Notes: a model not told the origin generated them from the letters alone. 64,000 nt of DNA from Lepidodermella squamata (GCA_047495785.1 JBLDXI010000054.1:434001-498000); one strand, 5' to 3'; shown: positions 3,166 to 32,485, counted from the stretch's first letter. Numbers and translations: made by a program.

Positions 3166-5359
3166 ATTGTGTCTTTGTGTGTATATTTGCCAGGATACAA
3201 ACGAAGATGTTTATGTTTTTATGTTTTATGCCCCTATTGATGTTAAGTTTTTCTGGGCTGTAATTTAGACGTATTTAAACGTATTGTCCTGCAGTTTTAG
3301 TGTTATAAATTGTTGAATTCGTTTGTGCGAAGCTGACAAATCAACAACTGGAAAGCTTAAAAAAGGTGAGATTGCGATACATCATACTTTGTAGAAGCGT
3401 ATCTGAATAGTTCGAACTGAAATGGCCGGCTGTAAAGCGCTTTTCTCCCAAAAACAGAAATCGGTTGTTACTGGTCGGAACTATCGAGAGAGGTCTTCGA
3501 ACTAGAGCTCAGCTTCTGACTTTTACCGTGCCGTAATTCCTTTGAAATAATCGGAAAGGATTTGATTCTTCGAAAGCTGCCTTTTTTGCGAATTCACCTT
3601 TTCCGGCGAGGTGAAAGTTGTCAACTGTCCCTGGTTTTGTTTCCCCGATTCAAATGCGAATTTCATTATATTGTTTGGTAACGATTTCTGTTTTGTAATA
3701 TCTAAAGGCATTGTTCATCTGAATTTTAAATTTTGTCTAACATAATGCCGCGAACTCCATTTCATGCCGATCAAGTCTCTCAATTGAAGAAGGTAACGCT
3801 GAGACTTTGCTTTTTTAACATTTCTTCTTATTGTATTAAGTGCCACTGATATTCAACACTTGCTCAGTGCTTGGAGTTGAGGCGAAATCGCAAGATTACC
3901 AAGGATATGGCTGCGTTTATAGCGAAAAACATCGGCACAACGGTTGTTAGAGTTCAAAACTGGTTTCACGCAAGAAGGAAAGGAGTTGAAGAGAAAACTA
4001 AGAAGAAGTTGCGAATCGAAGATATTCTCGGACAAGAAAATTTCAAATTGTTGATTTTGGAGGTGCAACATGATCCCAAGTTGGCAAAGGCGAGAAAGCA
4101 GCTGCTAGCCCGAAACTTTGGCCTTCCTGAGTGGCAAGTTAAAAGATTTTTCAGTATGCATCGCATCAAACAAAAGGCTGTTCGCACGATCATGACAAAA
4201 CAGCAGAAGGAAATATTCGAAAAAGTAAGCTTTGAAACGATGTAAAGTATATTTCATCTATCAGAAATTCTTGAACTATTAAGTTTGCTGTTTACTTTTT
4301 CCAATGTTTAACGCCAATATTTTCATGGGGAAATCTTGCTTGTCAAAAATTAATGCCTTGGTTGCTGCTAGAAGTTCTCAGTCGACAAAAAATATTCGGG
4401 CTATTTTCTGGTAGTGCTTCTCATATATTTAATCAATATTCTGGTTACTCTTTTATCAGGAATTCAGGAAGAATTGCAGCATGTCACAGCAGAGATTGAA
4501 CGAAATTGCCGAAGTTATGGGCATAACATCTCGTCAGGCCGGATGTCTTGTTGCTAAACAACGAACACGAGAGGGAATCCGTAGAATGGCGAAATCTGAA
4601 TCCATTCTATTCACGAATTCTCAACTGGCAGAACTAGAGGAAGCATTCCAGTCAACAGTGGCGATGGGCGATAGCTTTGACGATGTCCTCGTTCAAAGAT
4701 TGGCCATCAACACTGGATTGAAGAAAACCGTGATCAGAAATCGTTCGAGTTGCGACGTAAGAGACCTCGTTAGGCAGTACTTTCATGCGGTTTGTAATAA
4801 AATACTTGGTACTGGTATAAGCTACTGTTTATTCGTTAGTAATAGCATCATTATCGCGGCGCATCCGATACCGAGCGGTTGCAACGCCTACCAGAATGCG
4901 TACTGCGCACAAACGCTTCAGACAATTTCTCCGTTATCATGGCCAAATTCTTAAAATCAACCAAGTTTATCCTCTTCTTCCTTATTTCACCTTCGTTCAT
5001 TTCGAGCGTAGTCTAGGATAATACTTTTCTGTCTCTCTGTATCTATATTACTAAACGACGAAGGTCCTCAACGGCTAAATTTGAATTTTCCTTTGTATTC
5101 GGCGGCATGCTTAAATAGTATACTTCTACTCACTGGGTAGCCGAGTGCTTAGTGTCATTAGATAGAGAATAAAAAACTACTCGAGCGAAAAATGCCAGAT
5201 TTCGAATCCGTCAAATCCGCAGTGTCAAAAATGCCAAAAAACAAATAGAGCGCTTTCTGATTTTGAACGCAATTTAATTTAAAATACGAAAACATTTTTA
5301 AACTGTTAGTTAATTACTAAATCAAATTCTTATTAATTGAAATTTAAATATTTTCCATG

Positions 5360-6145
5360 GCGACGCGTTTGCGGGGAAATTCAAAAATTCCGGTCGCCGG
5401 GCGCCGCGTCGCCTGACCTTTGGGGTTCCATTATCTCAACCAAGGACACGTCCACGGGGTCGGGGCATGGCAAATTCGTGCTCAGCATGGTCGAATTGAT
5501 AATTACAGCATGAGAAAAGCAAATAAATCAAAAAAAAATTAATTATGTTGATCTCATGCATTGTCGTCACTATTCACAGGTACCATGATGGAAGACGCTC
5601 TAGATGTTACTCCTTGAGGGCGAATGGCGACTTTTAAAAGCTTTTACTACTGCTTTTCTATCTTAGATTTGTTGATTTCGTAGAAATAGATGGTTAATTA
5701 GTGTTTTCACATCTCATGAACGTCCTTTGCAAGATGTTGGATGTTCATGTTACGCATCCCTTTTAGGTTTAACCTCACTCATCTATTGCAAGATCTTCTG
5801 AGACTGGCTCAGGTCTGTAGAGCATCTACCAAGATCATTTTATTAATGAATCAACTATGCTGAGTAAGAAAAACAACAGTAAAACCTTCGGGGAGTAATC
5901 CATCACCTCAAGGACTGAACTAATTCGACTTAGCCATGTTACAAGTGTTCTTGCCTGTGCATGAATCAGATATGCTAACCCTTTCATATATTCACATTTC
6001 TATCTGGGCTTTCTAATCAAATCGACCATGTTGATGACGAATCTTAAGTGCGTTAACTTCAGGGACGTGTCTTTAGTTGAGATTTTAGAACCCATCAGTG
6101 TAGTCGACGCGGTTACCAGTGATCCGAAATTTGAGAAATTCCACG
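5360..6145. mobile_element. Degenerate foldback element (long imperfect inverted repeat)
   Basis: 5420-5500 (GGGTTCCATTATCTCAACCAAGGACACGTCC...CATGGTCGAATTGAT) mirrors 6016-6095. 5613-5660 mirrors 5868-5913. Confidence 0.65.
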
Positions 6146-6325
6146 GTGGGTATACATTGGGTTCTAATTCGCCTGTTATTTACTAGTTGTCTTGTTGAAC
6201 CATGAACCATGACCCATGACCATCACCACTTGTTGAAACATGACCAGAGTCTTCGAAAGGGCATACTTTGTTATTGAGTTTCTCATTCCCGGAGCAACAT
6301 TGCATGCAACCCACGAAAATGCATA

Positions 6326-6714
6326 CCGTATTTTGTGGATAAACGACGATTAGTGACGAAAAATCGCAACCTATCCAACTTAACCACTTACCCAGCAGGC
6401 GCTCATGTAAGCCACTTCATACAAGGCCCTGCCTATTAATACGGTTCTGCCCAGTGTGCGAAGTAGGACTTGGGACCTGAGGTGTTTTCTACCTGTTTTC
6501 TAGAACCCAGCCGAAGAAACCAAAGGGTCCCCCCTGTGGTTTTTTCAGCCTTTCTCTGGTTGGAGCCCTGGAGCTGGGGTGTCGCGACACCCCAGCACCC
6601 CTGTACTTCGCACCCTGGTTCTGCCCTTTATTATTTCAAATGACCATTACCCTCTGCCCTTTATTCCGGTTCTGCCCAATAATTGGGTCCTGCCTAATAA
6701 TTCGTAAAATACGG
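6326..6714. mobile_element. Tc1/mariner/pogo-type MITE (TA TSD)
   Basis: TA|CCGTATTTT...AAAATACGG|TA. Internal CTGCCC repeats are shared with the element at 53360-53773. Confidence 0.65.
6452..6617. mobile_element. hAT-type MITE nested in the previous MITE (8-bp TSD GTTCTGCC)
   Basis: CAGTGTGCGAAGTA...TACTTCGCACCCTG with GTTCTGCC on both sides. Related copies at ~21098-21260, ~61190-61283 and ~61790-61926. Confidence 0.85.
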
Positions 6715-7753
6715 TATTATGGAACTATGGACTAGATGAGCCAATTTTTCGACTATTCAGCCCCTAAATCCTGAAAATGCCAAGATAGCACTTATTACGC
6801 TATTATTCATAACCTATTTTGTGAATATCCTTCTCCATTATCTCGCAGATATTTCGTTATCCTTCTTAAATTCTATGACATGAAAAAGCGATCACATATT
6901 TTTCTGTTTCGATCACAGAATCAATCGCATTTCATGTTTTGTCAACTTTTTATGAGCCGTTGAGCCGTACGAGCTAAAGTGAACTACAACCTACAACCTT
7001 GTGCGAAGCACGTGAAATCACTGGAAGTAGATTCGCAGCCGCACAGGGTCTATAGTAGAATCGCACAATGTTTGCGTACTTGGTAGCATTCGAGAATTGC
7101 TAGGATGATTTGCATCCCTACATCCTAAGAAAGATAGCGAATGTTCTTGGTAATGTCATCTGGTTAGCGATTTAGCGATAATTGATGATTAGCAATTAAC
7201 AGCGATTCCGCCGTATTCGAGTAATGCTCGATTGGCTTGATTCCTATACGACAAATCCAGACCCACCATGCAAGTTTGGGTTTCACGATTTTTGCGCGGA
7301 CTTCGTAATGAAATACTACGTCTAGAGCAAAATGCCACGGACTAATTGTTATCAAAGAAAACAAAGAAAGTATATTTTACAAAGCGCATCCACTCGGTCA
7401 TTTTTGTTGGAATCCTATAATTAGGGCTATCAGGAATGCTGACGGCACTTCAAACCGATCTATTGGCGAGAATGTAGATTCTCCGGGGTTCAGAGTAAGT
7501 GAAGGCTAAAAAGTGGCGCGTACTTCACGATGAGAACGGGTTACGGGTAGATCTCTGGAGCAACTGGAGCGATTTGTTCTGCTTGGCAAGGATAAATCAA
7601 AGCGCAGCTTGTTAGAGACAAATCTGATCTGCTCTAGGTATTAAAATTTAACACTTAATGAGCTTAATTAGTCTCCAATAGACTAATTCTTCGTTTTGAA
7701 AGGGGAGAAAACAGCATTCAAAGCAGGATGCATCGCCATCACTACTCCGTAGT

Positions 7754-7939
7754 TGTTAGCGTCGTTGAATAACTCGGATTCGGGCTTGTTCACGTCAGTT
7801 ACAGATTACAGACAGTTGACGGGTGTCAAGTTTGCTTCCCCTCTTCATTTATAACGCTCCTATCACCTTTTACTTGTCACTATTCATCTTGTAACTGACG
7901 TGAACAAGCCCAGATCTGAGTTATTCAACGACGCTAACG
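7754..7939. mobile_element. Hairpin MITE, copy 1
   Basis: ~50-bp TIRs GTTAGCGTCGTTGAATAACTC.../...GAGTTATTCAACGACGCTAAC. Confidence 0.8.
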
Positions 7940-8273
7940 CTCCCGTTTCTGTGGCTTACGAAGTTAGTTATCGTTAGTTAGTTTGCTAGATACCCAATAG
8001 AGTATCGCCGTCCTCTATTCTTGAAAATTGTTACTTCACCTGTTTCGGTTTTAGGGGATACATTTTCAGAAAACTTTGAATACCGCTTGTTTTATGATTG
8101 CGACACTACAAAGATTATCCGCTACCTTCCAGCGGCGGGGTCTACTTTCAATAATATTACGTGTTCATAAATATCATTCTATAATTTTTCGCAGTAATCA
8201 GATGAACTTTCTATTTAGAATGGGTCATTTCTAAAATAGTTAGTAATGATTCATCAAAATCTTATCGCAATAT

Positions 8274-8458
8274 CGTTAGCGACGTTGAATAACTTTAATT
8301 TGGGCTTATTTAAATCTGTTTCAAGGTCACGGGTGACAAGTAAAAATGACATTTTTCAAAGTACAAAGAGGCAAAAACAAAATGCTTTTTACTTGTTACC
8401 TATCAATTTGAAATAGATGCAAACAAGCCTAAATCCGAGTTATTCAGCGTCGCTAACG
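8274..8458. mobile_element. Hairpin MITE, copy 2 (ATAT TSD)
   Basis: ATAT|CGTTAGCGACGTTGAATAAC...GTTATTCAGCGTCGCTAACG|ATAT. Confidence 0.8.
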
Positions 8459-9951
8459 ATATCTCTCAAAGCTATTAAAGTAGCAATAGTGCATCCTATT
8501 AGCTGCCGAATTGTTAAATTGAAAATGTTAAATTCTGCATTGTTGATAGGATTATTTTACTTCAACTTTTACGCGAAGTCGCCCCTTTATTTATAGCTGA
8601 TTGGATATTGATTGGGAATCAGAAATGGAAAATAGGCGAAATTCCGGCAAAAGGTCGCTACTAAACTATTGCTGAGTGCTGGCTATTTCGATACATTCAT
8701 AGCAATTTGAGATGCAACCGCTCCGCAGTTGTAAACAACCGCAATATAGCGGTATAATAATATATAGAAATATGCGCTAGCACTGGCGGTCCCTTACGTC
8801 GCAACACGAACGAAATTGGTTCCAGGACAGGCGCAAATCTGCTGGCCTAGTAAAGAAACAAAAAACTCTCGATCCAAGTAGTATTCGCGCTCTCAATGCC
8901 GTGGGTTCAATTCTTGATTAAAGGCTGCAGTGTTCCAAATATGTTGTAAACAGGAATTCGCTGTATCGAGCCGTTTGGAAGTAGAAAGAAGGCTAGAGAT
9001 AGTGGAAAAGTTTGGATTAAAACCCAGCCAGGTTCGTCACTTCTTCGTTAGAAAACGGAAACAATTAGGTATAGCGAAAAAGAAGCAATCCCGTCCTCGA
9101 ACACTGGTTAATTTCCAGAAAAAAACCTTGACTAAGGTGTGAAGAGGCTTATAATTCCAAACGGTGTAATTTTTTAATTTCTTCTTTTTGCACTCAGGAA
9201 TTCAATGAGAATCCAGATCTACTGGAAACTGGAATGAGTCGCCTTGCAGAAAGTCTGGAAATCCCTTTTAACATTGTGAAAGGTTTCTTCGAAAATCACC
9301 GCTCAAAAGCTCGAGGTCCTGCTAGACGTCGAGCAAGAAGAGCATTGACCTGGGAACAGCGGCTTCTTCTAGAAAAGGTGATTCCTGAAAAGTTTCAAGA
9401 TTCCAAGAATTGCTTTATATCATCATTGCGATTCCATTTATTTAGGAGTATAAAATCTCCGAATTCGTAACTCATGAGCAAGCTCAACGCCTAGCTTCTT
9501 CAATGGGGCATTCAATCGCGAAGGCAATTACTAATGCATTTTAATTATTAGTTATTTTTTCAATTCTTTTCATTTAATAGATAAAGAGGTGGTTCAATTC
9601 TAAACGGTTTTATGAAAAAACTAAGCAGAAGACAGTTGGTTCTTGAACATCTTGGTTTCTCCTGTTACAAACTACAGTTCATGGCGAATATTTACCTACC
9701 TTACGGAACGGTTACAAGCAATTTTATCGGGCTTGGAGGTTTCTCCATCCGTATCTGGTATTATTACAGTTTTGAATAGGGAATTCCCAGGCTAAATACC
9801 CAGAAATCGTGATGAATATCGTAATTGTACATTATAGAAATTGTAATGATCTTTTATCTCATCAATTGTGACCGATTTTTTCCGTAGGTAAAAAACATAA
9901 AACATAAAAATCTAAATCTAGGTGTAATCTAAATACTTCTAAATACGCGAT

Positions 9952-10176
9952 TTGAAAGACGTTTTTGCTAAAAGCGTAATGGAGAGTGGGAAATTCGATG
10001 AAGCTCGCTGTAGAAGCATAGCTGGCAAGGTCGGATTGAAATTGACAGCGGTGAAGATGAAGCGCTGGTTCGCCCAGAAACGGAAATTGGTTGGCATCGG
10101 TGCGAGGCGAATTTTTCAGAGTGATCTTTTAACTAGAGCTCAGCTTCATACGAAGGACCGCGCCAAAATTCCTTGA
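9952..10176 (+). pseudogene. Isolated, divergent HD4-like homeobox fragment
   Basis: LKDVFAKSVMESGKFDEARCRSIAGKVGLKLTAVKMKRWFAQKRK aligns to HD4 (LQEAFQSTV..GDSFD.ALY..LA.KTGLK..V..WF...RK). Confidence 0.65.
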
Positions 10177-12211: not shown

Positions 12212-12329
12212 ACTCCAGATCTCACGAAGGACTTCCTAGCAATAAGTCAAGCAATATGCTCTGATTTTTGGTTTTTTAAACGTTTTTTTGATATTATTAG
12301 CCGTACTATATTTTTTAAGGCGAATACTT

Positions 12330-12950: not shown

Positions 12951-12964
12951 TAGCCCCGAGTAAG

Positions 12965-13985: not shown

Positions 13986-15248
13986 ATGTTGCCAACCCAG
14001 CTGAAAGCCGATCAGCGCTCTTACTTGTTGAAGGTAACGCCATGAATAATGCTTCAAAATTATACTATTATTTACTAATTTCAAATCTTACTCAGTGCTT
14101 CGATTTGATGCGAAATCGTATTCTTACTAAAGATATAGCTGAGCTCATAGCGAAAAAGATTGGCACATCGGTTGTGAAAGTGCGAAACTGGTTTCACAAA
14201 AGAAGAACAAAAAAAGACGTTGATGGGAAAGCTATGAAGATCTTGCGATTGAAAGATATTCTCGGGGAAGAAAACAACGAATTGTTGATGCTCGAAGTGA
14301 AAAATGATCCTAAACTGAGCAAGGGCAGACAGCAGATGCTGTCACGACGATTCGGCTTGACTGAGAGCCAGGTTGAACGATTCTTCCGCAAGCATCGAAG
14401 CCAACGAAGGGCACGTGTTCAATTGAAGTTGACATCCCATCTAATTGAAGAATTCGAGAAGGTTAAAACGAGGAGCGCTATTTGTTTTATCTGGTGGTGG
14501 ATTTTTTTTACAGAAATTCAAGCAGAATCCTGGCGCTTCAAAGAAAAGGTGCCGCGAAATGGCTGAATCCTTGGGCATAACAGTTAATCAGGCCACACGC
14601 CTTGTCTTAAAGCGACGAGCCCAAGTGGGATTACGTGGTAGAAAAGCAAAATCTGAATCAATTAGATTTACGAATTTTCAGCTGGCGGAACTACAGAAAG
14701 CATTCCATTCAACAATGGCAAGGGGCGACAGATTTGACGATGCACTTTATGGAAGTTTGGCTGAACAAACCGGATTGAGAAGGTATTGGGTCAGGAATTG
14801 GTTTGTTACCAAGCGCAAATCTGTTGGCCTCGGAAAGCGATTAGCTCTTGATCAAAACACTGCCTGCGTTTTAAATGCTGTGAGTTCACCCTTGGTGGAA
14901 GGTTGAAATATTCCAGATGTATTATTCTTCAGGATGGCCGAGCGCAACTGACCTTGGAACAGCGACTTGTCCTGGAGAAGGTGGTTTTATTAGTTTGAAG
15001 AGTTGGAGATATTTATTCGCTCCATTATGCTAATAATTTAGGAGTATGCAACCTCAAAATTCGTAAAGCACTTGCAAGCTGAACGTCTAGCTGCCTCAAT
15101 CGGATATCCCACCGAGAAGGCAATAACGTTTACACTTTATTTCCGAGTTCTTTCTTTATTCCTTTCATTTTTGTAGATAAAGAAGTGGTTCAGGTTGAAA
15201 AGAGAGAATGAAAAAAAGAAACAGAAGGAAGAAGCATTAGGTTTGTGA
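13986..15248 (+). CDS. Multi-homeodomain gene copy 3, in-frame 5-HD variant (~325 aa)
   Basis: Exons 13986-14033, 14096-14461, 14514-14879, 14933-14980, 15042-15119 (GC donor), 15177-15248. The frame is open; the HD5 body and HD6 are deleted. Confidence 0.75.
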
Positions 15249-16238: not shown

Positions 16239-17873
16239 ATGTCGCCAACCCAGTTTTATGCCGATCAGGTCTCTTACCTTATAAAGGTAGCGCTTTATTA
16301 AACTTACTTGTTATTAGTGTTTTTTTTACAATTTTATTTGCTCAGTGCTTCGATTCGATGCGAAATCGCGTTCTTACTAAGGAAATCGCCGAGTTGATAG
16401 CAAACGAGATTGGCACATCGGCTGTTAAAGTTAAAAAGTGGTTTCACACAAGGAAGGGAAAACGTGTTGATAACATGAGCAGGAAGTTTCGGCGATACCA
16501 AAATATTATAGGGGAGGAGAAATACGAACTGTTGAAATCGGAAGTGAAACATGATCCAAAGTTGACCAAGGCGAGAAAGGGACTGCTGGTACGACGATTC
16601 GGCCTCACCGAGCGTCAAGTTGAAATGTTCTTTTACAAGCATCGTATTCAACGACAGCAACCTTTTTGCTTAACACCCCAGCAGAAAGAAATGTTCGGGA
16701 AGGTATAACTGAGAACTGATAATTGCTTTCCTATAATGTTCCCGTAATGAACTGATAATGTTCGCTATAGGAATTCAAGAAAAATCCTGTCGCGTCTCAG
16801 CAAAGATGCGGTGAAGTGGCTGAAGCCGTGGGAATAACATTCAACCAGGCCAAGCGGCTAATCGTTAAACGACGAGCTGAAGTGGGGTTGCACGGTAGAA
16901 TGGCGAAATCTGAATCCATTCGATTCACAGAATTTCAACTGGCAGCACTGCAGGAAGCATTCCAGTCCACGGTGTCAAGGGGCGACAGCTTCGACCTTGC
17001 CCTTTATCAAAGTTTGGCCAAGAAAACCGGATTGAAGAAGGCCGTGGTCAATAATTGGTTCTTAACCCGGCGCAAATCTGCTGGCCTGGTAAATAAACGA
17101 GTACGTCTCGAACCAAGTTCTATCCGCGCTCTTGATGCAGTGAGTGCAACTCTTGATCAAAAGTTGCCATGTTCCTAATATTTGTGCCTCAGGAATTTGC
17201 TTTATCTAGCGGAATGTTTCGCAACAGAATGCAAACAATTGCGGAAAATTTGGGATTAACTGTCAGACAGGTTGAACACTTTTTCGTAATGAAACGGAGG
17301 CAATTGAGAACTGCGAAAAAAGAGCAATCTTGTCTTCGCACGCTCAACAATTTTCAACGAAAAGCCTTAAATAAGGTGCGATGAGGCATTGAATTTAAAT
17401 CGATGTCGGTGTACGTATTGTTATTTTTGCAATCAGGAATTCAATGAGAATCCAGATCTCCTGGAAACTGGACTAACTCGTCTTGCTGAAAGGCTGGAAA
17501 TCTCGTTTAATACTGTGAAAAGTTTCTTCGAAATCCGCCGTTCAAAAGTCAGAGGGCATTCTAGAAGCCGAACGACCTGGGAACAGCGGTTTCTTCTTGA
17601 AAAGGTTATTGTTCGAGTGTGAAGATTGAATGGATTGCTTTGCTTTATCATTGTGCTTCAATTTATTCAGGAGTATGAAATCTCCAAATTTGTAACACTC
17701 AAGCAAGCTGAACGCCTAGCTACATCATTGAGATTATCGACCGAGAGGGCAATACAGCTTACACTTTTTCCGAGTTCCCCGAATATTTCTTCAATTTATA
17801 GGTACGGGGCTGGTTCAATTCGAAACGATTTTCTGAAAAAAAGAAAGAGAAGAAGCGGGAGACGATTGGATAA
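16239..17873 (+). CDS. Seven-homeodomain protein, copy 4 (intact, ~424 aa)
   Basis: Exons 16239-16286, 16346-16702, 16771-17139, 17193-17375, 17437-17604, 17671-17748 (GC donor), 17802-17873. All introns are phase 0. Seven helix1 (Q..L.K.F) / helix3 (WF/FF..RR) units. Confidence 0.85.
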
Positions 17874-18013: not shown

Positions 18014-19688
18014 ATGTCGCCAACCCAATTTAATGCCGATCAAGTATCTCACTTGATGGAGGTAACGCGAAGGCTACGTTTATTGAACAGTTCTTCGTAT
18101 TGTAAATGAATGTTTGTGCTTACTCAGTGCTTCGAGTTGATGCGAAAGCACAACCTTACCAAGTATATGGCTGAGGTTATAGCGAGAAATATCGGCACAA
18201 CGGTTGTTCGAGTTCAAAATTGGTTTCACAGAAGAGGAAGGAAAGGAGTTGAAGAGAAAACCAAGAAGGTATGGCGATATGAATTTATTCTCGGGAACGA
18301 AAAGAGCAAATTGTTGATGTCGGAAGTGAAGCGTAATCCCAAGTTGTTCAAGGCGAGGAAGCAGCTGTTGGCGCGAGAATTCGGTCTCACCGAGCGCCAA
18401 GTTGAAAGATTCTTCCGCAAGCATCGTATCCAACAGAGCACATGCGTTCGCCCGAAAGTGACACAGCTGCAGAAGGAAATATTCCAGAAAGTATGTTGTA
18501 AGGCGATATGAGACCCTCCGCCATAAATACATAAACGAAAATCTTTATCCCGGATACTTTTTTACTGCTACCATTTTTTTGCCATTAGGAATTCATACAG
18601 AATACCAGCGCGTCGCAGCATAGATTTCGCGAAATTGCTGAGATTGCAGGCATAACATTCTGTCAGGCCAGACGTCTTGTCGTTCAAAGACGGGCAGAAG
18701 TGGGACTCCGACGCAGAAGGGCGAAATCTGAACCCCTTGAATTCACCAAGTCCCAACTAGCAGAACTGCAGGAAGCATTCCAGTCAACAATGGTGAGGGG
18801 CGATAGCATTGACGATGCCCTATATGAAAGTTTGGTTGGGAAAACTGGATTGAAAAAAACTGCGATCAAGAATTGGTTCTCCGACCAGCGCAAATCAGGT
18901 GGCCTCGCGAGGAAACAAAAAATGCTCGATACAAGTATTATCTGCGCTCTAAATGCTGTGAGTTTTTGCTAAAACGTTTCAATGATCCAAATAAGCTTTT
19001 CCTCAGGAATTCGCTGTATCGAGCCGAATGGAAGACGGCAGAGTGCAAGCAATTGCGGACAAGTTGGGATTAACTTTTGGACAGGTTACACATTTTCTCG
19101 CTATCAAGCGAAGGCAATTGAGGACTGCAAGAAATGAGCAATCCCGGTGCAGCGGACTGGAGCGTGACCAACGTAATGCGTTGACTAAGGTGTGATTAGT
19201 CTCTTAATGCCAATCGATAACTTTTTCTATGTTCAGCAATTCGATGAGAATCCAGATCTACAGGAAAGTGGAATAACTCGTCTGGCTGAACGATTGGAGA
19301 GCCCTCTTAATATTGTGAAACGTTTCTCCCAAACGCACCGTGCGGAAGCTAGAGGTCCTGGTGTATGTCGAGTTACCTGGGAGCAGCGGCTTCTTCTAGA
19401 AAAGGTAAACAAAAATTAACAAGTTTGATTTTTGAAGGGTGAAGGCGTTACTTTGTTTCATAATTTTGATTCAATTTTTTCAGGAATATGAAATCTCCAA
19501 ATTCGTAACACGCGATCAAGCTGAACGACTAGCAACGTCAATCGGATATCCGGCCGAGAAGGCAAAATAAACCCTACACTGTTATTTTCCTTAGAAAATG
19601 TTTTGATCATTTTTAGATACAGCGGTGGTTCAGTTGGAAACGTTATTCGAAAAAAGGAAACCGGAGAAAGAATCAATCGGTTTCATAA
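18014..19688 (+). CDS. Seven-homeodomain protein, copy 5 (intact, ~426 aa)
   Basis: Exons 18014-18061, 18128-18490, 18589-18957, 19007-19189, 19237-19404, 19484-19561 (GC donor), 19617-19688. No stop codons. Confidence 0.85.
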
Positions 19689-19918: not shown

Positions 19919-20430
19919 ATGTTAGACCCAAAAAAGCAACTTTCACAAAATCAATCGTCCTATTTGCTAAAGGTTACAACTGACCAATTCCTTAATCGTT
20001 GTTAGTGATACTAATTTTGTGTCTACAAGAGCTTCGAAGTGATGCGCGATCGTATTCTCACTAGCGGTATTGCAAATCGCATAGCGAAGAAGATTGGCAT
20101 ATCGGTTTTTCAAGTTGGAAATTGGTTTTACAGAAGAAGAAAACATGAAAGGCATTGGCGCCCACCTCGATTGGAAATGATTAGCCAGTGGCAATGGCGT
20201 AGAATCATCAGGGTAGCTGAATCATGATTCGCATTCCTGAGAATTTGTCTGTAACCCTTATCCAGGAGGTCGATAATCACTACGTCCTTCCTCGGCATGT
20301 AATAACTAAGCTGATGGCCGAAACTGGACTGCATGCGATTCAAATCGGCCGCTGAGACGAGCTTCCACAAAATACCGCGCATTAATGATGGCGAAGAACG
20401 GATATCAAACGCCTTGCAAAAAGGTATTAC
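19919..20430 (+). pseudogene. B-type homeobox gene (HD1 plus a distinct second HD), stop inserted in helix 3
   Basis: MLDPKKQLSQNQSSYLLK|SFEVMRDR...VGNWFYRRRK...WRRIIR|EVDNHYVLPRHVITKLMAETGLHAIQ, then a foreign patch carrying TGA at 20353-20355. Paralog at 30412. Confidence 0.7.
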
Positions 20431-20870: not shown

Positions 20871-21097
20871 TCTGGTTGGCGTTGCTTCTACTATGTATGA
20901 GATGCGACGTAATAATGAAGTTATCCCGATAATACAAATTAGCTTGTCCCGGTACGAAGTATTTTATTACAAATATCAAGAAAGTACTGCCAAGGATCTT
21001 CCTTACTTCGCAACTCGTACGATAGGTGATGCGTTTGCAGCTGCATTGTTTTAAATTCTCGGTTGGCTTAACGTTTTTCCCTCTCTAGTTCGGGGAT

Positions 21098-25488: not shown

Positions 25489-26625
25489 ATGTCGAAGCAG
25501 ACCCAACTTGATGCCGATCAGGTCTCTTACTTGATGAAGGTAACGCCAGGGCTTCGCTTTTTTTACAGTTCTTTTAATGTTAACTACTATTTTTCTCAGT
25601 GCCTCGAGTTGCTGCGAAAACGCAAGCTTACCAAGGATATGGCTGAGTTCATAGCGACAAAGATTGGCACAACGGTTGTTAAAGTTCGAAACTGGTTCCA
25701 AACGAAAAGACGAAGAGGAGTCGAGGTGAGAACTAAGATTTGGCGTTTCAGAGATATACTAGGGAAAGAGAAAAACGAGCTTTTAATGCTGGAAGTGAAA
25801 CATGATCCGCAGCTGTTCAAAAGCAGGCAGCAGAGGCTGGCGCAACGATTCGGCTTGACGGAAAGCCAGGTTGAAGTATTCTTCCGCAAGTATCGCGCCA
25901 AACGAAGGGCTCATGTTCGCCTGAGGTTAACGCCCCAGCAAAATGAGAAATTTGAAAAGGTTACTCGGCCAGCAGGCTTCCTCGGGGTCCTCTGCCCACC
26001 TTCGGTGTGTGATCGTTCCGTGTCTCTTCCGTCTTTCTACATCTTGTACGTCTTGTCTTGTATAATCCTGGTTCCTCTTCTCCTTTCTTTTCTTTTTCTT
26101 CCTGTTGCACTCCTTCTGTTCTGATTAACCCATTACATGTAATCTTCTGCATACGATAAATATTCCTTTAGCTCGCCCACTAGCGTCCTCAGCGCACTGC
26201 CGCCGGCAAGCGCTTGTCGTCTCGCAACCGCGTGCCATCTCTGTCACTTTGTATATATTGTTCGCAAGGAAGGAATTTATTATTTTATATTGTTCTTTTA
26301 TATTTTTGTGACTGATGGACAAATAAATTTGAATTTAGAATTTAGAATTTAGAATTTAACGAAGTTGCTGAAGCTTTGGGCATCACATTTAGTCAGGCCA
26401 CACGTCTTGTCTTAAAACGACGAGCTCAAGAGGGAATATGCGGTAGAAGAGTCAGATCTGAACCCATGAAAATCTCGAATCCTCAAGAAGCAGACCTTCA
26501 GGAAGCATTCCTGTCCACAGCGGTGGTTGGCGGCAGCTTTGACGATGCCCTCTATGAAGGTTTGGCCAAGAAAACTGGATTGAAAAAGTACGTGGTCAGG
26601 AATTGGTTCTCAACCCGGCGCCAAC
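25489..26625 (+). pseudogene. Seven-homeodomain gene copy 6, disrupted and truncated by LINE sequence
   Basis: Exons 1-2 are intact. Intron 2 and the start of exon 3 are replaced by a LINE 3' end (25965-26358). The gene ends after HD4 WFSTRRQ. Confidence 0.8.
25965..26358 (+). mobile_element. LINE 3' end with (GAATTTA)n tail
   Basis: GCCAGCAGGCTTCCTCGGGGTCC as at 52710, pyrimidine UTR, then AATAAATTTGAATTTAGAATTTAGAATTTAGAATTT. Confidence 0.85.
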
Positions 26626-27520
26626 TTGACCGGCACCACGTGCGGGCCCATGACGCTCCCTGACGGCAGTTTCCTCCACCCTTCCGTGGCTCTGGCCGAT
26701 CAGCTACTCACCCACTTTATCGCCCCGATGTATCCCTGCTGTGATCCGGCCACCGATGTGGCAACGCGTCAGCGGTGGTTCGAGCTGGAACATGCGATGG
26801 CCAACGACCCGGCCTTGCATCCCGTCGGTGCGATTCGGCTTCCTGGGCCTCAGAACTTCAACGTCAGCCAGCGAATGCTAGCGCGCGAGATCGATCGACT
26901 GCAGCCTTTCAAGGCACCTGGACTCGATGTCATCAGCAATGTCTACTACAAGTGGGGCGATGTTCCCCTGCAGATACACCTCAGGCGGCGGTACAACCTC
27001 CAAGAGTGAGGTTTTCGCATTCTCCTGTCGTCCCCCCGGTGCGAGGCTCGTGCTTGGAGGCGCCGTCATCCCGCAAGTCTCTGTAATGCGAATTCTGGGC
27101 ATTCTGTTCGATGACACGTTGACCTGGAACAAGTTGACATTGTGTTTGAGGTTGTAAGTTGAAAAAAATCCGCACGCTGATTGGTCAGTTGGCTTGTATC
27201 CATGACTCCGCCTTGCTACTTGATCGTGCGATCCATAAAATGTTTGCAAAAAATACTTCTTTTATGAATGGTTTTACGCATTTGTTGGAAACGCGTGCTA
27301 CGATACGGCCTTCATAAAAATAATAAAAGCGAATATTTATATGGATCGCACGATAAAGTAGCAAGGCGGAGTCATGGATACAAGCCAACTGACCAATCAG
27401 CGTGCGGATTTTTTTCAACTTACAACCTCAAACACAATGGACAAGTTGACCTGCCCCATATCGACCACGTGCTCAATCGCTGCCTGGACAGGCGCCTTGT
27501 CGTGCTGTGCCTGCGCCTTT
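26625..27520 (+). mobile_element. Internally deleted LINE ORF2 fragments
   Basis: LQPFKAPGLD (RT domain 0) and IPQVSVMRILGILFDDTLTW (RT thumb). Confidence 0.8.
27138..27439. mobile_element. MITE with ~100-bp TIRs inserted in the LINE fragment (~9-10-bp TSD ACAAGTTGA)
   Basis: CATTGTGTTTGAGGTTGTAAGTTG... / ...CAACTTACAACCTCAAACACAATG. Confidence 0.85.
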
Positions 27521-27699: not shown

Positions 27700-29691
27700 A
27701 TGTCTCAAACCTTTCTTGAAACCGGTCAGATCTGTTACTTGATGAAGGTATCGACCGGAACAGTTCTTTATATTGATAACAACTATTTTCCAACCTTTTC
27801 TCAGTGCTTCGAGGTGATGCGAAATCGTAATCTTACTAAGCAGATCGCTGAGTGTATTGCGGAAAAGATCGGCACATCGATTACTAAAGTTCGAAATTGG
27901 TTTCATACCAGAAGGAAGAAAAGAGTTGATGATAGGGCCCAGGTGATCTGGCGTTACAGAACTATTCTAGGGAAAGAAAACTACGATTTGTTGCTGCTGG
28001 AAGTGAAACGTGATCCTAAACTCTCCGAGGGAAGACTGCAGATGCTGGCACAGCGATTCGGCCTGACGGAGGGCCAGGTACAGAGATTCTTCTGCAAGCA
28101 TCGCAGCCAACGAAATACATATCTTCGTGCGTTGACATCCCAGCAAAATGAGAAATTCGAGAAGGTGAAACTGAGACGCAATATTTGCCTAATCTTGTTA
28201 TTGAATTTTACAGGAATTCGAACAGAATCCCGGCACTTCGCAGCAGAGATCCCGCGAGATTGCTGAAGCTCTTGGCATAACATTTAGTCAGGCTAAACGT
28301 CTTGTCGCTAAACGGCGAGCGCAAGAGGGAATCCGCGGTAGAACAGTGAAAGAGAATAGATTCACGAATTCTCAACTGGCTGAACTAGAAGAAGCATTCC
28401 AGTCAACGGCGGTGATGGGCAATAGATTTGACCTTGCTCTTTATGGAGGTGTGGCCAAGAAAACTGGCTTGAAAGGAACCGAGGTCAGGCAATGGTTCCA
28501 TATCCGGCGCAAATCTGCTGGCATCGGAAGGAAAAATATCGCTCAAGGTAGTATCCGCGCTCTGAATGCTGTGAGTTCAACCGTTGGTCAAACGTTGCTA
28601 TGATTAAAATATGTTTTGCCTTAGGAATTCACCTTATCTAGTCGAATGGAAGGCCGCAGAGCGCAGGCCATCGCGGAAACGTTGGGATTAACTTCCAGAC
28701 AAGTTATATGCTTTTTCAGAACCAAGCGGAAACAATTACCGTACTGCCCGGAACAAAAACCATGACATTTATTTTTTTCAAACATTGATGAACCCCTGAC
28801 ATTTAAAAGGGACTGACATTTATTTCGGGCCTGACATTTATTTATCCGAACCAACCAGTAATTGACTAGATAACCAAAATGGCATACATTTCCCTGAGAT
28901 TCTACATATTTTGACCCAAAATTTGGTCCCTGACCTTTCTAAGTGCCAATGGTAGAAATTATATCAAATCAAAAAGGCTAAAACTACCTTATTAGTGATC
29001 TTCAGTATTGTCCCCGCCACTGACCTGACATTTATTTCGGGCCTGACATTTATTTTTACGAACGACCTCTAACCTCTGACAATTATTTGAGGCTGCCATT
29101 TATTCGAGGCTGGCATTATTTTCGGGCAGTACGGTAAGAACGAAAAATGAGCGATGTCTTCCTCGCAGACTCAAACATGAGCAACAAAATGCCCTAACTA
29201 AGTTGTGATGAGGCTGTTTTAACATCCATGAATTTGTTTTATTGCGATCAGGAATTCAATGAGAATCCAGAATTGAATGAAACTGAATTTACTTGCCTAG
29301 CTGAACGACTGGAAGTCCCTTTCGATGTTGCGAAACGTTTCTTTCAAAAACTGAGAGCTGAAGCCAGAGGACGACTCAAAACCGTACTGACAAGGGAACA
29401 GCGGCGGTTTCTAGAAAAAGTGATTGACTCGAAAAACTTCAGAGGATTGCTTTGTTATATCGTTGTGATTCAATTGATTCAGGAGTATGAAATGTCCAGA
29501 TTCGTAACACGTGAGCAAGCTGAACGCCTAGGACTTTCAATGGGATATCCGCCCGAGAAGGCAATAAAGCTTATACTTTCTTTCTGACGTTCCTTTTTAA
29601 TATTTCGTCCCCTTTTCAGGTGCAGAGATGGTTCAGGTGGAGAAGGGTAAATGAAAAAAGGGATCTGAAAAAAGAAGTGGTCATTTCATGA
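27700..29691 (+). pseudogene. Seven-homeodomain gene copy 7, exon 4 interrupted by a MITE
   Basis: All 7 exons are recognisable. MITE at 28739-29134. The exon 4 donor reads AAG|TTGTGA versus AAG|GTGTGA in paralogs. GC donor retained. Confidence 0.8.
28739..29134. mobile_element. Tc1/mariner/pogo-type MITE (TA TSD)
   Basis: TA|CCGTACTGCCCG...CGGGCAGTACGG|TA with internal TGACATTTATTT repeats. Removal restores KRKQLRT. Confidence 0.85.
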
Positions 29692-30029: not shown

Positions 30030-30235
30030 GGAATTGTCAGGAATCTCCTAATTCGTAACTCGCGAGCAAGCTTAACGCCTAGCAATTTCAACCGGATATC
30101 CGACCAAGATAAGCTTACACTGTGCTTTTTCTCAAAATACTGTTTGAATCATTGTTGAGATTCAGAGGTTGGAAACGATATTCGAAAAAAATAAACAGAA
30201 GAAAGAAGCCGGTTTCTGCACATCTCATCTCACGT
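30030..30235 (+). pseudogene. Relic of the HD7 exons (3' end of a further copy)
   Basis: Degenerate match to 19484-19710. The block 19480-20450 is duplicated at ~30030-30940. Confidence 0.7.
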
Positions 30236-30411
30236 CGAATGATCAGCGAGAATTTGGATTTTGGATTTTTAATTTAGCGATTCTCTCGACCCTGTCTGAT
30301 ATGACATCAGCAAATTGCTTGATATGAAATAACTCTTCAAGAAATTTTTATTTTATTGTTGAAACTAATTTCCCTTCGTAGATATTCACAGGCTGCTTTT
30401 ACTTGAGCTTC

Positions 30412-32485
30412 ATGTTGGACCCAACAGAGAAACGTTCAGACAATCAACTGTCTTATTTACTAAAGGTAACAACGAACCAATTGCTCAATGGCATTTAGGT
30501 AGTGATACTTATTTGTTCCAACAAGAGCTTCGAAGTTATGCGTGGTCGCATTCTCACTAGCGGTATTGCAAATCGCATAGCGAAAAAGATTGGTACGTCG
30601 GTTGTTCAAGTTCGAAACTGGTTTTACAACAAACGGAGAGCTGAAAAGCATCGCAGATCAACTCGGCAAGAATGGATAAGACCGTGGCAAAAACTTAAAA
30701 TCATCGAGGTAATTGAATATCATTCGCATTCATTTTCTTAAATTAGTCTGTAGGAGGTCGATAAGCACTACGTACTTCCTCAGCATGTGATAACTGAGCT
30801 AATGGCCGAAACTGGACTGCATGCGATTCAAGTAAAAGGAGTTTACAAGAAATACCGCAGCTCAATGATGGCGAAGAACGGTTATCAAGCGCCTTGGAAT
30901 AGGGTATTATAGCCACTATATTAGGTTCATCAATTAACTTTCCAACTTAGCTTCACGTTCCCAAAGTCGTCAAGGCTAAGGCTAAGCAGAAAGAAACGAA
31001 TGAAAAAAACGAGTCGTCGATGTTGGAAGTGAAACAGAATCCCAAGTTGGTCAAAGCAAGAAAAAAAGTTCATGTGAAATCTAAGAGGATTGGGCGATTG
31101 GAAGATATTCTCGGGGAAGACGAAATCAAATTTTTGATTTTAGAAGTGACACGTAATCCCAAGTTGTTCAAGCAGAGAAAGCAGGTGCTGGCTAAAAAAT
31201 TTGGCCTTACTAAGCGCCAAGTTGAAATATTCTTCAATAAGCATCGCATTAAACAAAAGACACATGATCGGGCCAGGCTGAAAAAGCAGCAGATGGACAT
31301 TTTTGAGAAGGTAAGCCGTGAGGCGATACTAAAATAATATTTTGTTTTGTTTTCATCAGGAATTCAAACAGAATCCCGGCACTTCGCAGCAAAGATTGCA
31401 CGAAATTGCTACAATCGTGGGCGTAACATTATATCAAGCCGCTTATCTTGTCCGTCGAAGACGAAACCAACTAGGAATCCGCAGGCGAACCGTAATATCT
31501 GAACCCAGTAGATTCTCGAATTCACAGTTGGCAGAACTGCAGGAAGCATTTCAGACAACAGTTACGAGGGGCGATAAGTTCGACGTTTCTCTCTATCGAA
31601 GTTTGGCCAAGAAAACTGGATTGAAATGGGAAGTAATTAGGAATTGGTTCTATAACCAGCGAAAATCTGCTGGACTTGAAGTCAAACCAATCAAGAAAAG
31701 AGAAACTCTCGGTCCAAGTAGTATCTGCGCTCTGGAAGCTGTGAGGTCTTCATCATATCGCTGACAATTTTTAATGTTGTGTCATAGGAATTCGGTGAAT
31801 CCAGCGGCATGAGCGATGTCAGACTTCAAGCATTAGCGGAAAAGTTGGGATTAACTATCTCCCAGTTCACTACTTCTTCGCAAGAAAACGGAAACAATTG
31901 GGTATAGCGAAAATTAACAAGGCGAGTCTTTTGTCACTCAAATTTGATCAACGGCAAGCTTTGATGAAGGTGCGCTCAGGCTTTGAAGGTGCTCAAATTT
32001 TTGAAGGTTAAACATGGTTTAATAGGAATTCGATAAGAATCCAGATGTAGATGAAGCAGATATGGCTCGCATAGCTGAGAGTCTGGAAATTCCGTTTGCT
32101 CTTGTTGAACGCTTTTTCGAATATCATCGCAGTAAAAAAAGAGGCCCCGCCACAAAGCGAGCAAAGAATTTCCAATACTTCAGTTGGGACCAGCGTATTC
32201 TTTTAGAAAAGGTTATTAAGCTAATAATTCAAAAACATTAATTAATTCATGGTTTTCGAATTCACTCAGGAGTTTCGAATTTCTGAATTTGTGTCTCACG
32301 AACAGGCTAAAGAGCTCGCAGCAACTTTCCGATGTTCCGCTCAGAAGGTATGGAGTAGGCCTTATACATAAATTTTCCAGGTTTTATGAAAGTTGTTCGT
32401 TATCTGTTAGGTGAAACAGTGGTTCAACACACAGCGATTTCTTGGAAGGAAGAAAGAATCGAAACATGAAATTGCATCATCATGA
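30412..32485 (+). pseudogene. Chimeric B-type/7-HD gene (8 HDs plus a partial HD2 duplication), 1-nt frameshift in HD5
   Basis: B-type exons splice (AGG|GTATTA...TTAG|CTT) in frame into ORF 31020 (HD2 onward). CAG-TTCACTAC at ~31865 lacks the G of the paralog CAGGTT. The last intron uses GT. Confidence 0.7.

What the first reader, a model, noticed from the sequence alone, without database searches (positions are those of the whole stretch)
4730..31670. Hypervariable DNA-contact residues and loss of Asn51 across paralogs
Seen: HD4 helix 3 reads WFQDRRKS, WFLAQRKS, WFVTKRKS, WFLTRRKS, WFSDQRKS, WFSTRRQ, WFHIRRKS and WFYNQRKS in eight copies. Positions 50-52 change in almost every copy while the flanks stay fixed. 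HD1 (HA, TQ, HK, HT, HR, QT, YR, YN), HD5 (VR, YM, VM, AI, RT, AR) and HD7 (NS, RS, RL, SW, RW, NT) behave similarly. Known: residues 47/50/51/54 read bases, and Asn51 is near-invariant in homeodomains. Inference: diversifying selection on a recognition code (as in zinc-finger arms races), or a switch to non-TAAT, RNA or protein ligands.
Basis: partly seen in the sequence, partly recalled or inferred. Interest (0 to 1): 0.85.

Follow-up and report, generated by a model that had tools for sequence, protein, structure and literature searches.

The report
Tandem seven-homeodomain genes lacking Asn51
A cluster of nine copies (two intact) of an unknown animal-type gene encodes very basic proteins made of seven homeodomain folds that have given up the usual DNA-reading asparagine, and residue 50, the classic specificity residue, is the only position that changes faster than neutral drift.

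Summary
Window 3.7-32.5 kb (+) holds nine tandem copies of a 7-exon gene for a ~425-aa protein (pI 10.5) made of seven homeodomains (HDs). All eight quoted HD4 helix-3 strings are present. Asn51 occurs in only 2 of 50 HDs.

Paralogs are old (dS 0.5-1.0, ~55-62% protein identity). About half of the codons are under purifying selection (omega 0.18) and half are near neutral. The outward face of helix 3 (43, 46, 47, 51, 54) evolves at about omega 0.8-1, so it is released, not accelerated.

Residue 50 is the exception. It is the top site in my M2a and M8 fits (HD4:50, posterior 0.92/0.96). As a class its omega is 1.8, with P about 0.002 against a simulated neutral null. Deleting the seven residue-50 codons abolishes the whole positive-selection signal.

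Support is modest: eight paralogs, M1a/M2a p=0.052 on the full gene, and no significance when the class gets its own synonymous rate.

Only C4 and C5 are fully intact. The others carry transposon insertions, a stop codon, a frameshift or truncations, all apparently recent.

No relatives were found in the databases. The nearest known kind is the lineage-specific divergent multi-HD genes described in nematodes.

The parts
3745..9646 (+). Copy C1. Exons: 3745-3792, 3868-4224, 4460-4741 plus 8817-8900, 8954-9136, 9198-9377, 9446-9523, 9581-9646. Exon 3 (HD4) is split just before W48 by a 4-kb transposon.
   Evidence: tblastn with C4 exons; splice sites and translations
4742..8813 (.). Non-autonomous terminal-inverted-repeat (TIR) DNA transposon inserted in HD4 of C1. 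The inverted repeats are 26 nt and the target duplication is about AAAT. Removing the element and one duplicate restores the reading frame.
   Evidence: arms 4741-4766 / 8788-8813, 92% complementary
9943..10095 (+). Orphan HD4-like homeodomain fragment (helix 3 reads WFAQKRK) between C1 and C2
10680..12211 (+). Copy C2. Exons 2-7 are present. Exon 1 is degenerate, with no ATG, internal stops and no donor site. There is an in-frame stop in HD1.
13986..15248 (+). Copy C3. It is in frame but lacks exon 4 and most of exon 5 (the second part of HD5, and HD6), so it may be a five-HD gene.
16239..17873 (+). Copy C4, intact, 424 aa, seven HDs. Exons: 16239-16286, 16346-16702, 16771-17139, 17193-17375, 17437-17604, 17671-17748, 17802-17873.
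   Evidence: Pfam
18014..19688 (+). Copy C5, intact, 426 aa. It starts only 140 bp after the C4 stop codon.
19919..20224 (+). Copy C6: a fragment with a variant exon 1 (starts MLDP) and HD1 (WFYRRRK). Its 5' module is shared with C9.
25489..26624 (+). Copy C7: exons 1-2 plus an exon 3 truncated on both sides by inserted repeats. A LINE reverse-transcriptase fragment follows from 26625.
27700..29691 (+). Copy C8: all seven exons are present. Exon 4 is interrupted by a miniature transposon (MITE-like element), and the exon 4 splice donor reads TT instead of GT.
28739..29136 (.). Insertion of about 400 bp, MITE-like, with terminal inverted repeats and a TA target duplication, inside exon 4 of C8
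   Evidence: arms 28736-28762 / 29111-29137
30412..32485 (+). Copy C9, the most divergent. It has the variant 5' module (30412-30786), a rearranged exon 2, and a 1-bp deletion in HD5 after 31865. Its HD4 keeps Asn51 (WFYNQRKS).
17056..17076 (+). HD4 helix 3 (residues 48-54) in C4. The same element lies at 8817-8837, 11377-11397, 14799-14819, 18874-18894, 26604-26624, 28493-28513 and 31645-31665 in the other copies. Residue 50 here is the top positively selected site.

Best explanation
This is a birth-and-death tandem array of a lineage-specific gene. The product is a ~425-aa, very basic (pI 10.5) protein made of seven homeodomain folds.

Shown:
- Every HD has a phase-0 intron after helix 1, so the exons are modular.
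- Fold-determining residues (Q12, L16, E19, F20, R30, G39, V45, W48, F49, R53) are held by purifying selection.
- The canonical base-reading residues are not held. Asn51 is present in 2 of 50 HDs, and Arg5 only in HD3.
- The outward face of helix 3 evolves at about the neutral rate.
- Residue 50 evolves faster than neutral in HD2-HD5 and carries all of the gene's positive-selection signal.
- The lesions in the broken copies are recent.

Inferred: the HDs no longer read a fixed TAAT-type core. They keep a basic [KR]-R-[KR] patch at the C-terminal end of helix 3, consistent with nucleic-acid backbone contact. The proteins probably act as nuclear nucleic-acid or chromatin binders, or possibly as protein binders. 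The contact surface around residue 50 has diversified among paralogs, which would give each copy its own ligand preference. The ligand itself is not known.
For: Gene structure and copies.

HD identity: Pfam, AlphaFold2 model with pLDDT 77-89 over HD4, Foldseek with all top hits homeodomains, PDB profile search hitting Aristaless, Paired and ALX4.

Basic protein.

Conservation pattern by HD position.

Selection analyses:
- Pairwise dS 0.5-1.0, omega 0.32-0.60.
- M0 omega 0.53, with the likelihood reproduced exactly by IQ-TREE.
- M1a: 49% of codons at omega 0.18 and 51% at 1. M2a: 2.9% at omega 3.0. M8: 11.7% at omega 1.8. LRT p values 0.052, 0.0012 and 0.007.
- Top sites HD4:50, HD3:50, HD5:50, HD2:50. 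Four of the seven residue-50 codons are among the top 16 of 441 sites, hypergeometric P=4e-5.
- Class tests: residue 50 omega 1.80, residue 51 omega 0.86, residue 52 omega 0.38, outward face 1.0, buried face 0.23.
- Neutral simulation P=0.0017.
- Still omega 1.65 (2dlnL 5.7) with a local rate taken from helix-3 neighbours.
- The signal vanishes when the seven residue-50 codons are removed, and persists or strengthens when C9 and/or C2 are dropped.
- No omega difference between broken and intact lineages.
- No recent gene-conversion tracts.
Against: - There are only eight paralogous sequences and no orthologues, and terminal branches are long.
- The conservative M1a/M2a test on the whole gene is borderline (p=0.052). 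The 3' half shows no signal.
- When the residue-50 class is given its own synonymous rate, omega falls to 1.43 and the test is not significant. The excess would also vanish if the local mutation rate were 1.3-1.5 times the gene average.
- Multi-nucleotide mutations and undetected old recombination can inflate site-model tests.
- Six or seven of the nine copies are broken, so current function is unproven for most of them.
- Without Asn51 and Arg5 there is no direct evidence that any of these HDs binds DNA.
- There are no expression data.
Confidence: 0.5

Rival explanations
1. Pure relaxation. The helix-3 outward face lost its ligand-reading role long ago and simply drifts. Residue 50 is merely the least constrained position, and its apparent omega>1 comes from noise, local mutation-rate variation or model misspecification. 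The proteins work through other conserved surfaces: helix 1, helix 2 and the basic tails.
For: - Half of all codons sit in the omega=1 class.
- Residues 43, 46, 47, 51 and 54 have omega 0.74-1.13, none different from 1.
- Asn51 and Arg5 are absent.
- The residue-50 test is not significant when its synonymous rate is free.
- Full-gene M1a/M2a gives p=0.052.
- Helix 1 of HD4 (QLAELQEAFQST) is far more conserved than helix 3.
Against: - M7/M8 and M8a/M8 are significant, as is M1a/M2a on exons 1-3 and after dropping C2 and/or C9.
- Neutral simulation gives P=0.0017 for the residue-50 class.
- Residue 50 stands out even among 56 outward-facing helix-3 sites (permutation P=0.013).
- Local synonymous divergence in HD4 helix 3 is below the gene average, not above it.
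Confidence: 0.35
2. The array is a graveyard of decaying pseudogenes, and the variability is simply loss of all constraint.
For: C1, C2, C6, C7, C8 and C9 carry transposon insertions, a stop codon, a frameshift, a lost splice donor or truncations. Transposon fragments lie between the copies.
Against: - 49% of codons have omega 0.18.
- Splice sites, including an unusual conserved GC donor, are kept.
- C4 and C5 are fully intact.
- Terminal-branch omega is 0.56 for broken copies against 0.51 for the others (p=0.49), and the free-ratio model is not better than one ratio. The lesions are therefore recent relative to the divergence.
Confidence: 0.05
3. A zinc-finger-style arms race. The seven HDs form a modular recognition code that tracks fast-evolving DNA targets such as the transposons that litter this region. 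New copies arise and die as the targets change.
For: - The array is tandem and shows birth and death in a transposon-rich region.
- The positive-selection signal sits at the classic specificity residue in several HDs of the same protein.
- The protein is very basic.
Against: - No repressor or effector domain was found.
- Asn51 and Arg5 are missing, so canonical DNA reading is doubtful.
- Only residue 50 is accelerated, not 47 or 54.
- Paralogs are old (dS 0.5-1), not recently and repeatedly expanded.
- No targets are known.
Confidence: 0.1

Closest known systems
Divergent lineage-specific multi-homeodomain genes of Caenorhabditis (ceh-99 with 4 HDs, ceh-100 with 12 HDs, ceh-83 with 5 HDs, and others; Hench et al. 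2015, PMC4448998)
   Same: Both have many tightly packed, highly divergent HDs in one protein. Both lack recognisable orthologues outside close relatives. Both lie in regions full of other rapidly duplicating gene families. The best database hits to this window include Caenorhabditis nigoni multi-HD proteins. In a rough motif count, only about a third of helix-3 motifs in the 94 best hits have Asn51.
   Different: Similarity is only at the generic HD level (best 75 bits, E=5e-16). Shared ancestry is not shown and the source organism is unknown. This locus is a nine-copy tandem array of one seven-HD architecture, with a phase-0 intron after helix 1 of five of the seven HDs (all but HD2 and HD4). 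A residue-50 selection signal has not been reported for the nematode genes in the paper read.
ZF-class multi-HD proteins (ZHX1-3, HOMEZ, ZFHX) and the other recognised multi-homeobox families (Hdx, dve/Compass, amphioxus Muxa and Muxb, Dux), as listed in PMC6118893 and PMC7144352
   Same: Several HDs sit in one polypeptide. ZHX1 and ZHX2 HDs appear among the weak PDB sequence matches, and DUX4 double HDs among the fold matches.
   Different: No C2H2 fingers or other accessory domains are present. Those families are conserved across phyla, whereas this one has no detectable relatives.
Fast-evolving tandem homeobox arrays of mammals and insects (ETCHbox genes LEUTX, ARGFX and TPRX, PMC8208926; Rhox, PMC3214919; lepidopteran Shx, PMC4207634)
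   Same: Tandem duplication, gene loss, a mixture of relaxed and positive selection, and some selected sites inside the HD.
   Different: Those genes have a single HD (two in DUX). ETCHbox selected sites are mainly in the N-terminal arm and at S43, not residue 50. I recall that these HDs keep Asn51 and bind DNA, but I did not check this here.
KRAB zinc-finger gene clusters (from general knowledge)
   Same: Tandem arrays of modular nucleic-acid-binding repeats, with birth and death of copies and diversification at base-contact positions.
   Different: The fold is different, there is no KRAB-like effector domain, only one position per module is accelerated, and no target is known.

Membership tests
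Homeodomain superfamily (Pfam PF00046) | Profile match above the curated threshold | tested here: met
   Exon ORFs containing HD2 and HD4 score 32-45 bits against a 22.9-bit cut-off. Exon-split HD5 and HD6 score 21.5-21.9 bits, just below it.
Homeodomain superfamily (Pfam PF00046) | Three-helix homeodomain fold | tested here: met
   The AlphaFold2 model of exon 3 gives helices 54-70, 76-86 and 90-103, with pLDDT 77-89. All top Foldseek PDB hits are homeodomains, with target-normalised TM-score up to 0.87 and rmsd 1.3-2 A.
Homeodomain superfamily (Pfam PF00046) | Core residues L16, F20, W/F48, F49, R53 | tested here: met
   These are invariant or nearly so in all seven HD types. HD3 has L48 with V/I49.
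Canonical DNA-reading homeodomain | Asn51, the highly conserved residue of the recognition helix (PMC3460184) | tested here: not met
   Asn is at residue 51 in 2 of 50 HDs. K51 is conserved in HD2 and HD3.
Canonical DNA-reading homeodomain | Arg5 in the N-terminal arm (minor-groove contact; from general knowledge) | tested here: not met
   Position 5 is Arg in most copies only in HD3. Elsewhere it is S/P, Q, E/Q, P/L or variable.
Canonical DNA-reading homeodomain | Sequence-specific DNA binding | not testable with these tools
   Needs protein-binding microarray, SELEX, EMSA or DAP-seq.
ZF-class multi-HD proteins (ZHX/HOMEZ/ZFHX) | C2H2 zinc fingers next to the HDs | tested here: not met
   No zinc-finger family appeared in Pfam scans of ORFs covering exons 2-7 of C4. 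Exon 1, which was not scanned, encodes only 16 residues.
ZF-class multi-HD proteins (ZHX/HOMEZ/ZFHX) | Specific sequence relationship of the HDs | tested here: inconclusive
   ZHX1 and ZHX2 HDs match at E=0.006-0.009, weaker than PRD-class HDs such as Aristaless at E=5e-5.
Nematode-type divergent multi-HD genes (ceh-99/ceh-100 kind) | Many tightly packed divergent HDs, no orthologues beyond close relatives, and a position among fast-duplicating gene families | tested here: met
   Seven HDs in 424 aa. No close relative in 1.84 billion representative proteins or in metagenome contigs. The neighbours are arrays of Cys-loop receptors, a NACHT-ankyrin gene, a class C GPCR and LINEs.
Nematode-type divergent multi-HD genes (ceh-99/ceh-100 kind) | Common descent with the Caenorhabditis genes | tested here: inconclusive
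   Caenorhabditis nigoni multi-HD proteins are among the best hits, but only at generic HD level (74 and 68 bits summed over 8 and 5 HD stretches).
Arms-race arrays of modular DNA binders (KRAB-ZNF-like) | omega>1 concentrated at specificity-determining residues | tested here: inconclusive
   Met for residue 50 only. Not met for residues 47, 51 and 54. Statistical support is modest.
Arms-race arrays of modular DNA binders (KRAB-ZNF-like) | Effector (repressor) domain and fast-evolving genomic targets | tested here: not met
   No additional domain was found. Targets cannot be tested with these tools.

The most novel reading that the evidence does not exclude
The seven Asn51-less homeodomains form a modular recognition array. 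Residue 50 of each module is being diversified among paralogs by positive selection. This would be a homeodomain counterpart of the zinc-finger 'fingerprint residue' arms race, aimed at DNA, RNA or transposon-derived targets by a non-canonical reading mode.
Probability: 0.15. Interest if true: 0.8.

Novelty: new member of a known kind. Interest (0 to 1): 0.45.

Why it matters
Homeodomains are usually cited as extremely conserved DNA readers. Position 50 sets their specificity and Asn51 is nearly invariant.

This locus shows the opposite regime. The fold is kept in seven tandem modules and in nine gene copies. Asn51 is dispensable. Residue 50 is the only position with evidence of faster-than-neutral change.

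If that signal holds up in orthologues and in binding assays, it would offer a natural experiment. It could show how a homeodomain surface is re-used for new ligands, and whether multi-homeodomain proteins can evolve like zinc-finger arrays.

If the signal does not hold up, the locus is one more example of the lineage-specific, fast-evolving multi-homeodomain genes already described in nematodes. Their function remains unknown.

Tried and rejected
Searches for relatives:
- A profile of exon 3 searched against 1.84 billion representative proteins gave only generic multi-HD hits, best 75 bits.
- Two metagenome-contig scans, with exon 3 and exon 2 profiles, found nothing.
- A full-length spliced protein could not be submitted by reference, so the length-limited word-indexed search was not used on the HD gene.

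Identifying the organism:
- The class C GPCR gave one 31% hit.
- A Cys-loop receptor gave none.
- The LINE reverse transcriptase gave only unnamed metagenome proteins at 44-63% identity.
- Rfam and tRNA scans found nothing.
- The source therefore remains unknown. It looks like an animal-type genome with short introns and a CpG observed/expected ratio of about 1.1.

Explanations rejected:
- Recent gene conversion as the cause of the fixed flanks. The longest identical runs are 13-27 bp, close to the permutation expectation.
- Long-dead pseudogenes.
- An alignment artefact at helix 3. That region is gap-free in HD2-HD7 (HD1 has gaps at positions 42-43 and 53-54) and is anchored by residues 48, 49 and 53.

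A crude Nei-Gojobori count gave omega 0.64 for residues 50 and 51 pooled. It underestimates at near-saturated sites and was superseded by the likelihood analyses.

PAML and HyPhy are not installed. I wrote the M0, M1a, M2a, M7, M8, M8a and branch models myself and checked M0 against IQ-TREE.

Full report
WHAT IS THERE

The window is eukaryotic DNA of animal type. GC content is 44%, the CpG observed/expected ratio is about 1.1, and introns are 47-98 bp apart from one of 235 bp.

Between 3.7 and 32.5 kb on the + strand, tblastn with the exons of one intact copy finds nine tandem copies of the same gene.

The intact copy C4 (16239-17873) has seven exons with canonical splice sites, and its product is 424 aa. 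C5 (18014-19688) gives 426 aa. Both proteins have pI about 10.5 and a net charge of +38 to +46.

Each protein consists of seven homeodomains (HDs).
- A phase-0 intron lies after helix 1 (HD position 18/19) of HD1, HD3, HD5, HD6 and HD7. An exon therefore runs from helix 2 of one HD to helix 1 of the next.
- HD7 has a second intron at position 44/45. In six copies this intron uses a conserved GC donor, and in C9 it uses GT.

HOMEODOMAIN IDENTITY

- Pfam PF00046 scores above its gathering threshold for the exon ORFs containing HD2 and HD4.
- An AlphaFold2 model of exon 3 gives a three-helix HD4 with pLDDT 77-89.
- All top Foldseek matches in the PDB are homeodomains, including DUX4, Aristaless, ALX4 and Dlx5, with target TM-scores up to 0.87.
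- A profile search of PDB sequences puts PRD-class HDs first (Aristaless, E=5e-5). ZHX1/2 and DUX4 are weaker.
- HD4 has four extra residues, and HD1 two, in the loop between helices 1 and 2.

STATE OF THE COPIES

Only C4 and C5 are fully intact. C3 is in frame but lacks the second part of HD5, and HD6.
- C1 has a 4-kb terminal-inverted-repeat transposon inserted exactly before W48 of HD4. Its arms are 26 nt, and removing it restores the frame.
- C2 has lost exon 1 and carries a stop codon in HD1.
- C6 is a fragment.
- C7 is truncated by repeats on both sides of exon 3.
- C8 has a ~400-bp MITE-like insertion in exon 4 and a GT-to-TT change at the donor site.
- C9 has a 1-bp deletion in HD5 and a rearranged 5' end that it shares with C6.

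A class C GPCR gene on the opposite strand (21492-23957) and LINE fragments interrupt the array.

THE OBSERVATION

The HD5 and HD7 residue pairs are also correct. The HD1 list is right except for 'TQ'.

W48, F49 and R53 are fixed, and Asn51 occurs in only 2 of 50 HDs.

Residues 50 and 51 have mean pairwise differences of 0.73 and 0.71, against 0.46 for all columns. Positions 42, 43, 46 and 47 are equally variable, while 44, 45, 48, 49, 52 and 53 are conserved. The variable positions are therefore the outward face of helix 3, which is the face that lies in the major groove in canonical HDs.

Residues known to hold the fold together are conserved. The salt-bridge partners E19, R30 and R52 are identified as such from general knowledge. 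Arg5 is present only in HD3.

SELECTION ANALYSIS

I built a 441-codon alignment of eight copies, masking breaks.

Gene-wide picture:
- Pairwise dS is 0.5-1.0, dN is 0.22-0.41, and omega is 0.32-0.60. The tree is star-like with long terminal branches.
- No long identical tracts suggest recent gene conversion.
- My own codon-likelihood code reproduces IQ-TREE's GY+F3X4 likelihood exactly, at -7686.1665.

Site models:
- M0 gives omega 0.53.
- M1a puts 49% of codons at omega 0.18 and 51% at omega 1.
- M2a adds 2.9% of codons at omega 3.0 (LRT 5.93, p=0.052).
- M8 adds 11.7% at omega 1.8 (against M7, p=0.0012; against M8a, p=0.007).

Where the signal lies:
- The top site in both M2a and M8 is residue 50 of HD4 (posteriors 0.92 and 0.96). 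Residue 50 of HD3 (0.89 under M8), HD5 (0.76) and HD2 (0.64) follow. Four of the seven residue-50 codons are among the top 16 of 441 sites, P=4e-5.
- In the 5' half analysed with its own tree, M1a/M2a gives p=0.009. The 3' half gives no signal.

Class tests, with branch lengths fixed at the M8 fit:

| Class | omega |
|---|---|
| residue 50 | 1.80 (2dlnL 7.7) |
| residue 51 | 0.86 |
| residue 52 | 0.38 |
| residues 47/50/51/54 | 1.0 |
| outward face of helix 3 | 1.0 |
| buried face of helix 3 | 0.23 |
| all codons outside positions 42-54 | 0.54 |

Robustness of the residue-50 result:
- Six hundred neutral simulations give P=0.0017.
- With a local rate taken from helix-3 neighbours (1.08), omega is still 1.65, one-sided p=0.008. 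The excess would disappear if the local rate were 1.3-1.5 times higher.
- It is not significant if the seven codons are given their own synonymous rate.
- Removing just those seven codons reduces the M1a/M2a LRT from 5.93 to 0.74 (full gene) and from 9.37 to 1.51 (exons 1-3).
- Dropping C9, C2 or both gives LRTs of 7.5, 7.4 and 12.8.

Branch models show no omega heterogeneity (p=0.47). Broken copies (0.56) do not differ from the rest (0.51), so their lesions are recent.

ASN51

Residue 51 evolves neutrally in HD1, HD4, HD5, HD6 and HD7, and is a conserved Lys in HD2 and HD3.

Marginal reconstruction at the deepest node gives Asn for HD4 (0.52, against Asp 0.36) and HD6 (0.73). It gives Thr, Lys, Lys, Arg/Ile and Ser for the other five. 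Most of the 'loss' therefore predates the array. Parallel loss within the array is possible for two HDs, with low certainty.

INTERPRETATION

The fold is maintained. The canonical reading residues are not. The former DNA-reading face is released, and one position on it, residue 50, changes faster than neutral.

I consider a paralog-specific diversification of a contact surface centred on residue 50 slightly more likely (0.5) than pure relaxation (0.35). This would sit on very basic proteins that probably still bind nucleic-acid backbones. Decaying pseudogenes (0.05) are unlikely. A full zinc-finger-like arms race is possible but untested (about 0.1).

COMPARISON WITH WHAT IS KNOWN

Recognised multi-homeobox families are Hdx, dve/Compass, Zfhx, Zhx/Homez, Muxa and Muxb, and Dux (PMC6118893).

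The closest described situation is the set of divergent, lineage-restricted multi-HD genes of C. elegans (ceh-99, ceh-100 with 12 HDs, ceh-83 and others). These lie in fast-duplicating regions and lack orthologues (PMC4448998).

An exhaustive profile search found only such proteins, and only at generic HD level (best E=5e-16). By a rough motif count, about one third of their helix-3 motifs keep Asn51.

Mammalian ETCHbox arrays show a similar mix of relaxed and positive selection, but at other HD positions (PMC8208926).

The roles of residues 47, 50 and 54, and the conservation of Asn51, are taken from PMC3460184.

The locus is therefore a new member of a known kind. The residue-50 signal is the one feature that would be new if confirmed.

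LIMITS

- The organism is unknown.
- No orthologues were found.
- There are no expression data.
- Only eight paralogs were available.
- The site models were home-written, with the M0 model (only) validated against IQ-TREE.
- Recombination and multi-nucleotide mutation were not modelled.

Noticed in passing
window 4742-8813: A 4-kb non-autonomous DNA transposon with 26-nt terminal inverted repeats and internal nested inverted repeats (7755-8488). It sits inside the coding exon of C1 exactly at the HD4 recognition helix. No long ORF lies inside it.
   Followed up: partly
window 28739-29136: A MITE-like insertion of about 400 bp with terminal inverted repeats and a TA duplication in exon 4 of C8. 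The same exon also has its splice donor changed from GT to TT.
   Followed up: partly
window 9524, 12085, 15120, 17749, 19562, 29561 (donor sites); 32348 in C9: The extra intron in HD7 (position 44/45) uses a GC-AG splice pair (donor GCAAT) in six copies and GT-AG in C9. A conserved non-canonical donor is retained across old paralogs.
   Followed up: partly
window 17874-18013 and the ~120 bp upstream of each ATG: Only 140 bp separate the C4 stop from the C5 start. C1, C3 and C4 share a conserved upstream block with an acceptor-like TGTAG|G about 45 bp before the ATG. C5 has TTTTCAG about 60 bp upstream. This may be a 5'UTR intron, a trans-splice site or an operon-like arrangement. It was not tested.
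   Followed up: partly
window 34605-63702, minus strand: A tandem array of at least seven very divergent Cys-loop ligand-gated ion-channel genes. Single-ORF copies lie at 34605-35729, 40533-41678 and 46407-47534. Two-piece copies lie at 48678-49865, 56821-57987, 59590-60765 and 62250-63702. Pfam Neur_chan_LBD and Neur_chan_memb match weakly. The word-indexed protein search found no homologue.
   Followed up: partly
window 37835-39685 (-) and 21492-23957 (-): A NACHT-ankyrin ORF (617 aa), and a class C GPCR-like ORF (822 aa) whose single database hit has 31% identity. The GPCR lies inside the HD array between C6 and C7.
   Followed up: partly
window 1-3000, 50600-53000; fragments at 12300-13600, 20300-21000, 26600-27300, 32400-32900: GC-rich (56-59%) LINE copies with a gag-like CCHC ORF, an endonuclease and a reverse transcriptase, set in a 42% GC background. 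The nearest proteins are unnamed metagenome sequences at 44-63% identity.
   Followed up: partly
window 34008-34376 (+) and 36415-36945 (+): Two paralogous ORFs encoding small cysteine-rich, apparently secreted proteins with a shared motif (RAEYART..RYCPEGNYCNAA..DCDC..KNNMTWCPT). The one scanned (34008-34376) has no Pfam match.
   Followed up: no
window 9943-10095 (+): A solitary HD4-like homeodomain fragment (WFAQKRK) between C1 and C2. It may be a remnant of a tenth copy.
   Followed up: no
window 19919-20300 and 30412-30790 (+): C6 and C9 share a variant 5' module. It has an exon 1 starting MLDP, an HD1 with Y50, and then a further HD-like stretch (..VLPQHVITELMAETGLHAIQVKGVYKKYRS). This may be a second gene subtype fused to, or adjacent to, C9.
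   Followed up: partly
codon alignment of the HD genes (e.g. window 16270-16360, 17100-17139, 17360-17450): Synonymous divergence dips to pS 0.17-0.27 (gene mean 0.47) around several exon junctions and to 0.27-0.33 in HD4 helix 3. This suggests nucleotide-level constraint, such as splicing signals, superimposed on the coding constraint.
   Followed up: partly
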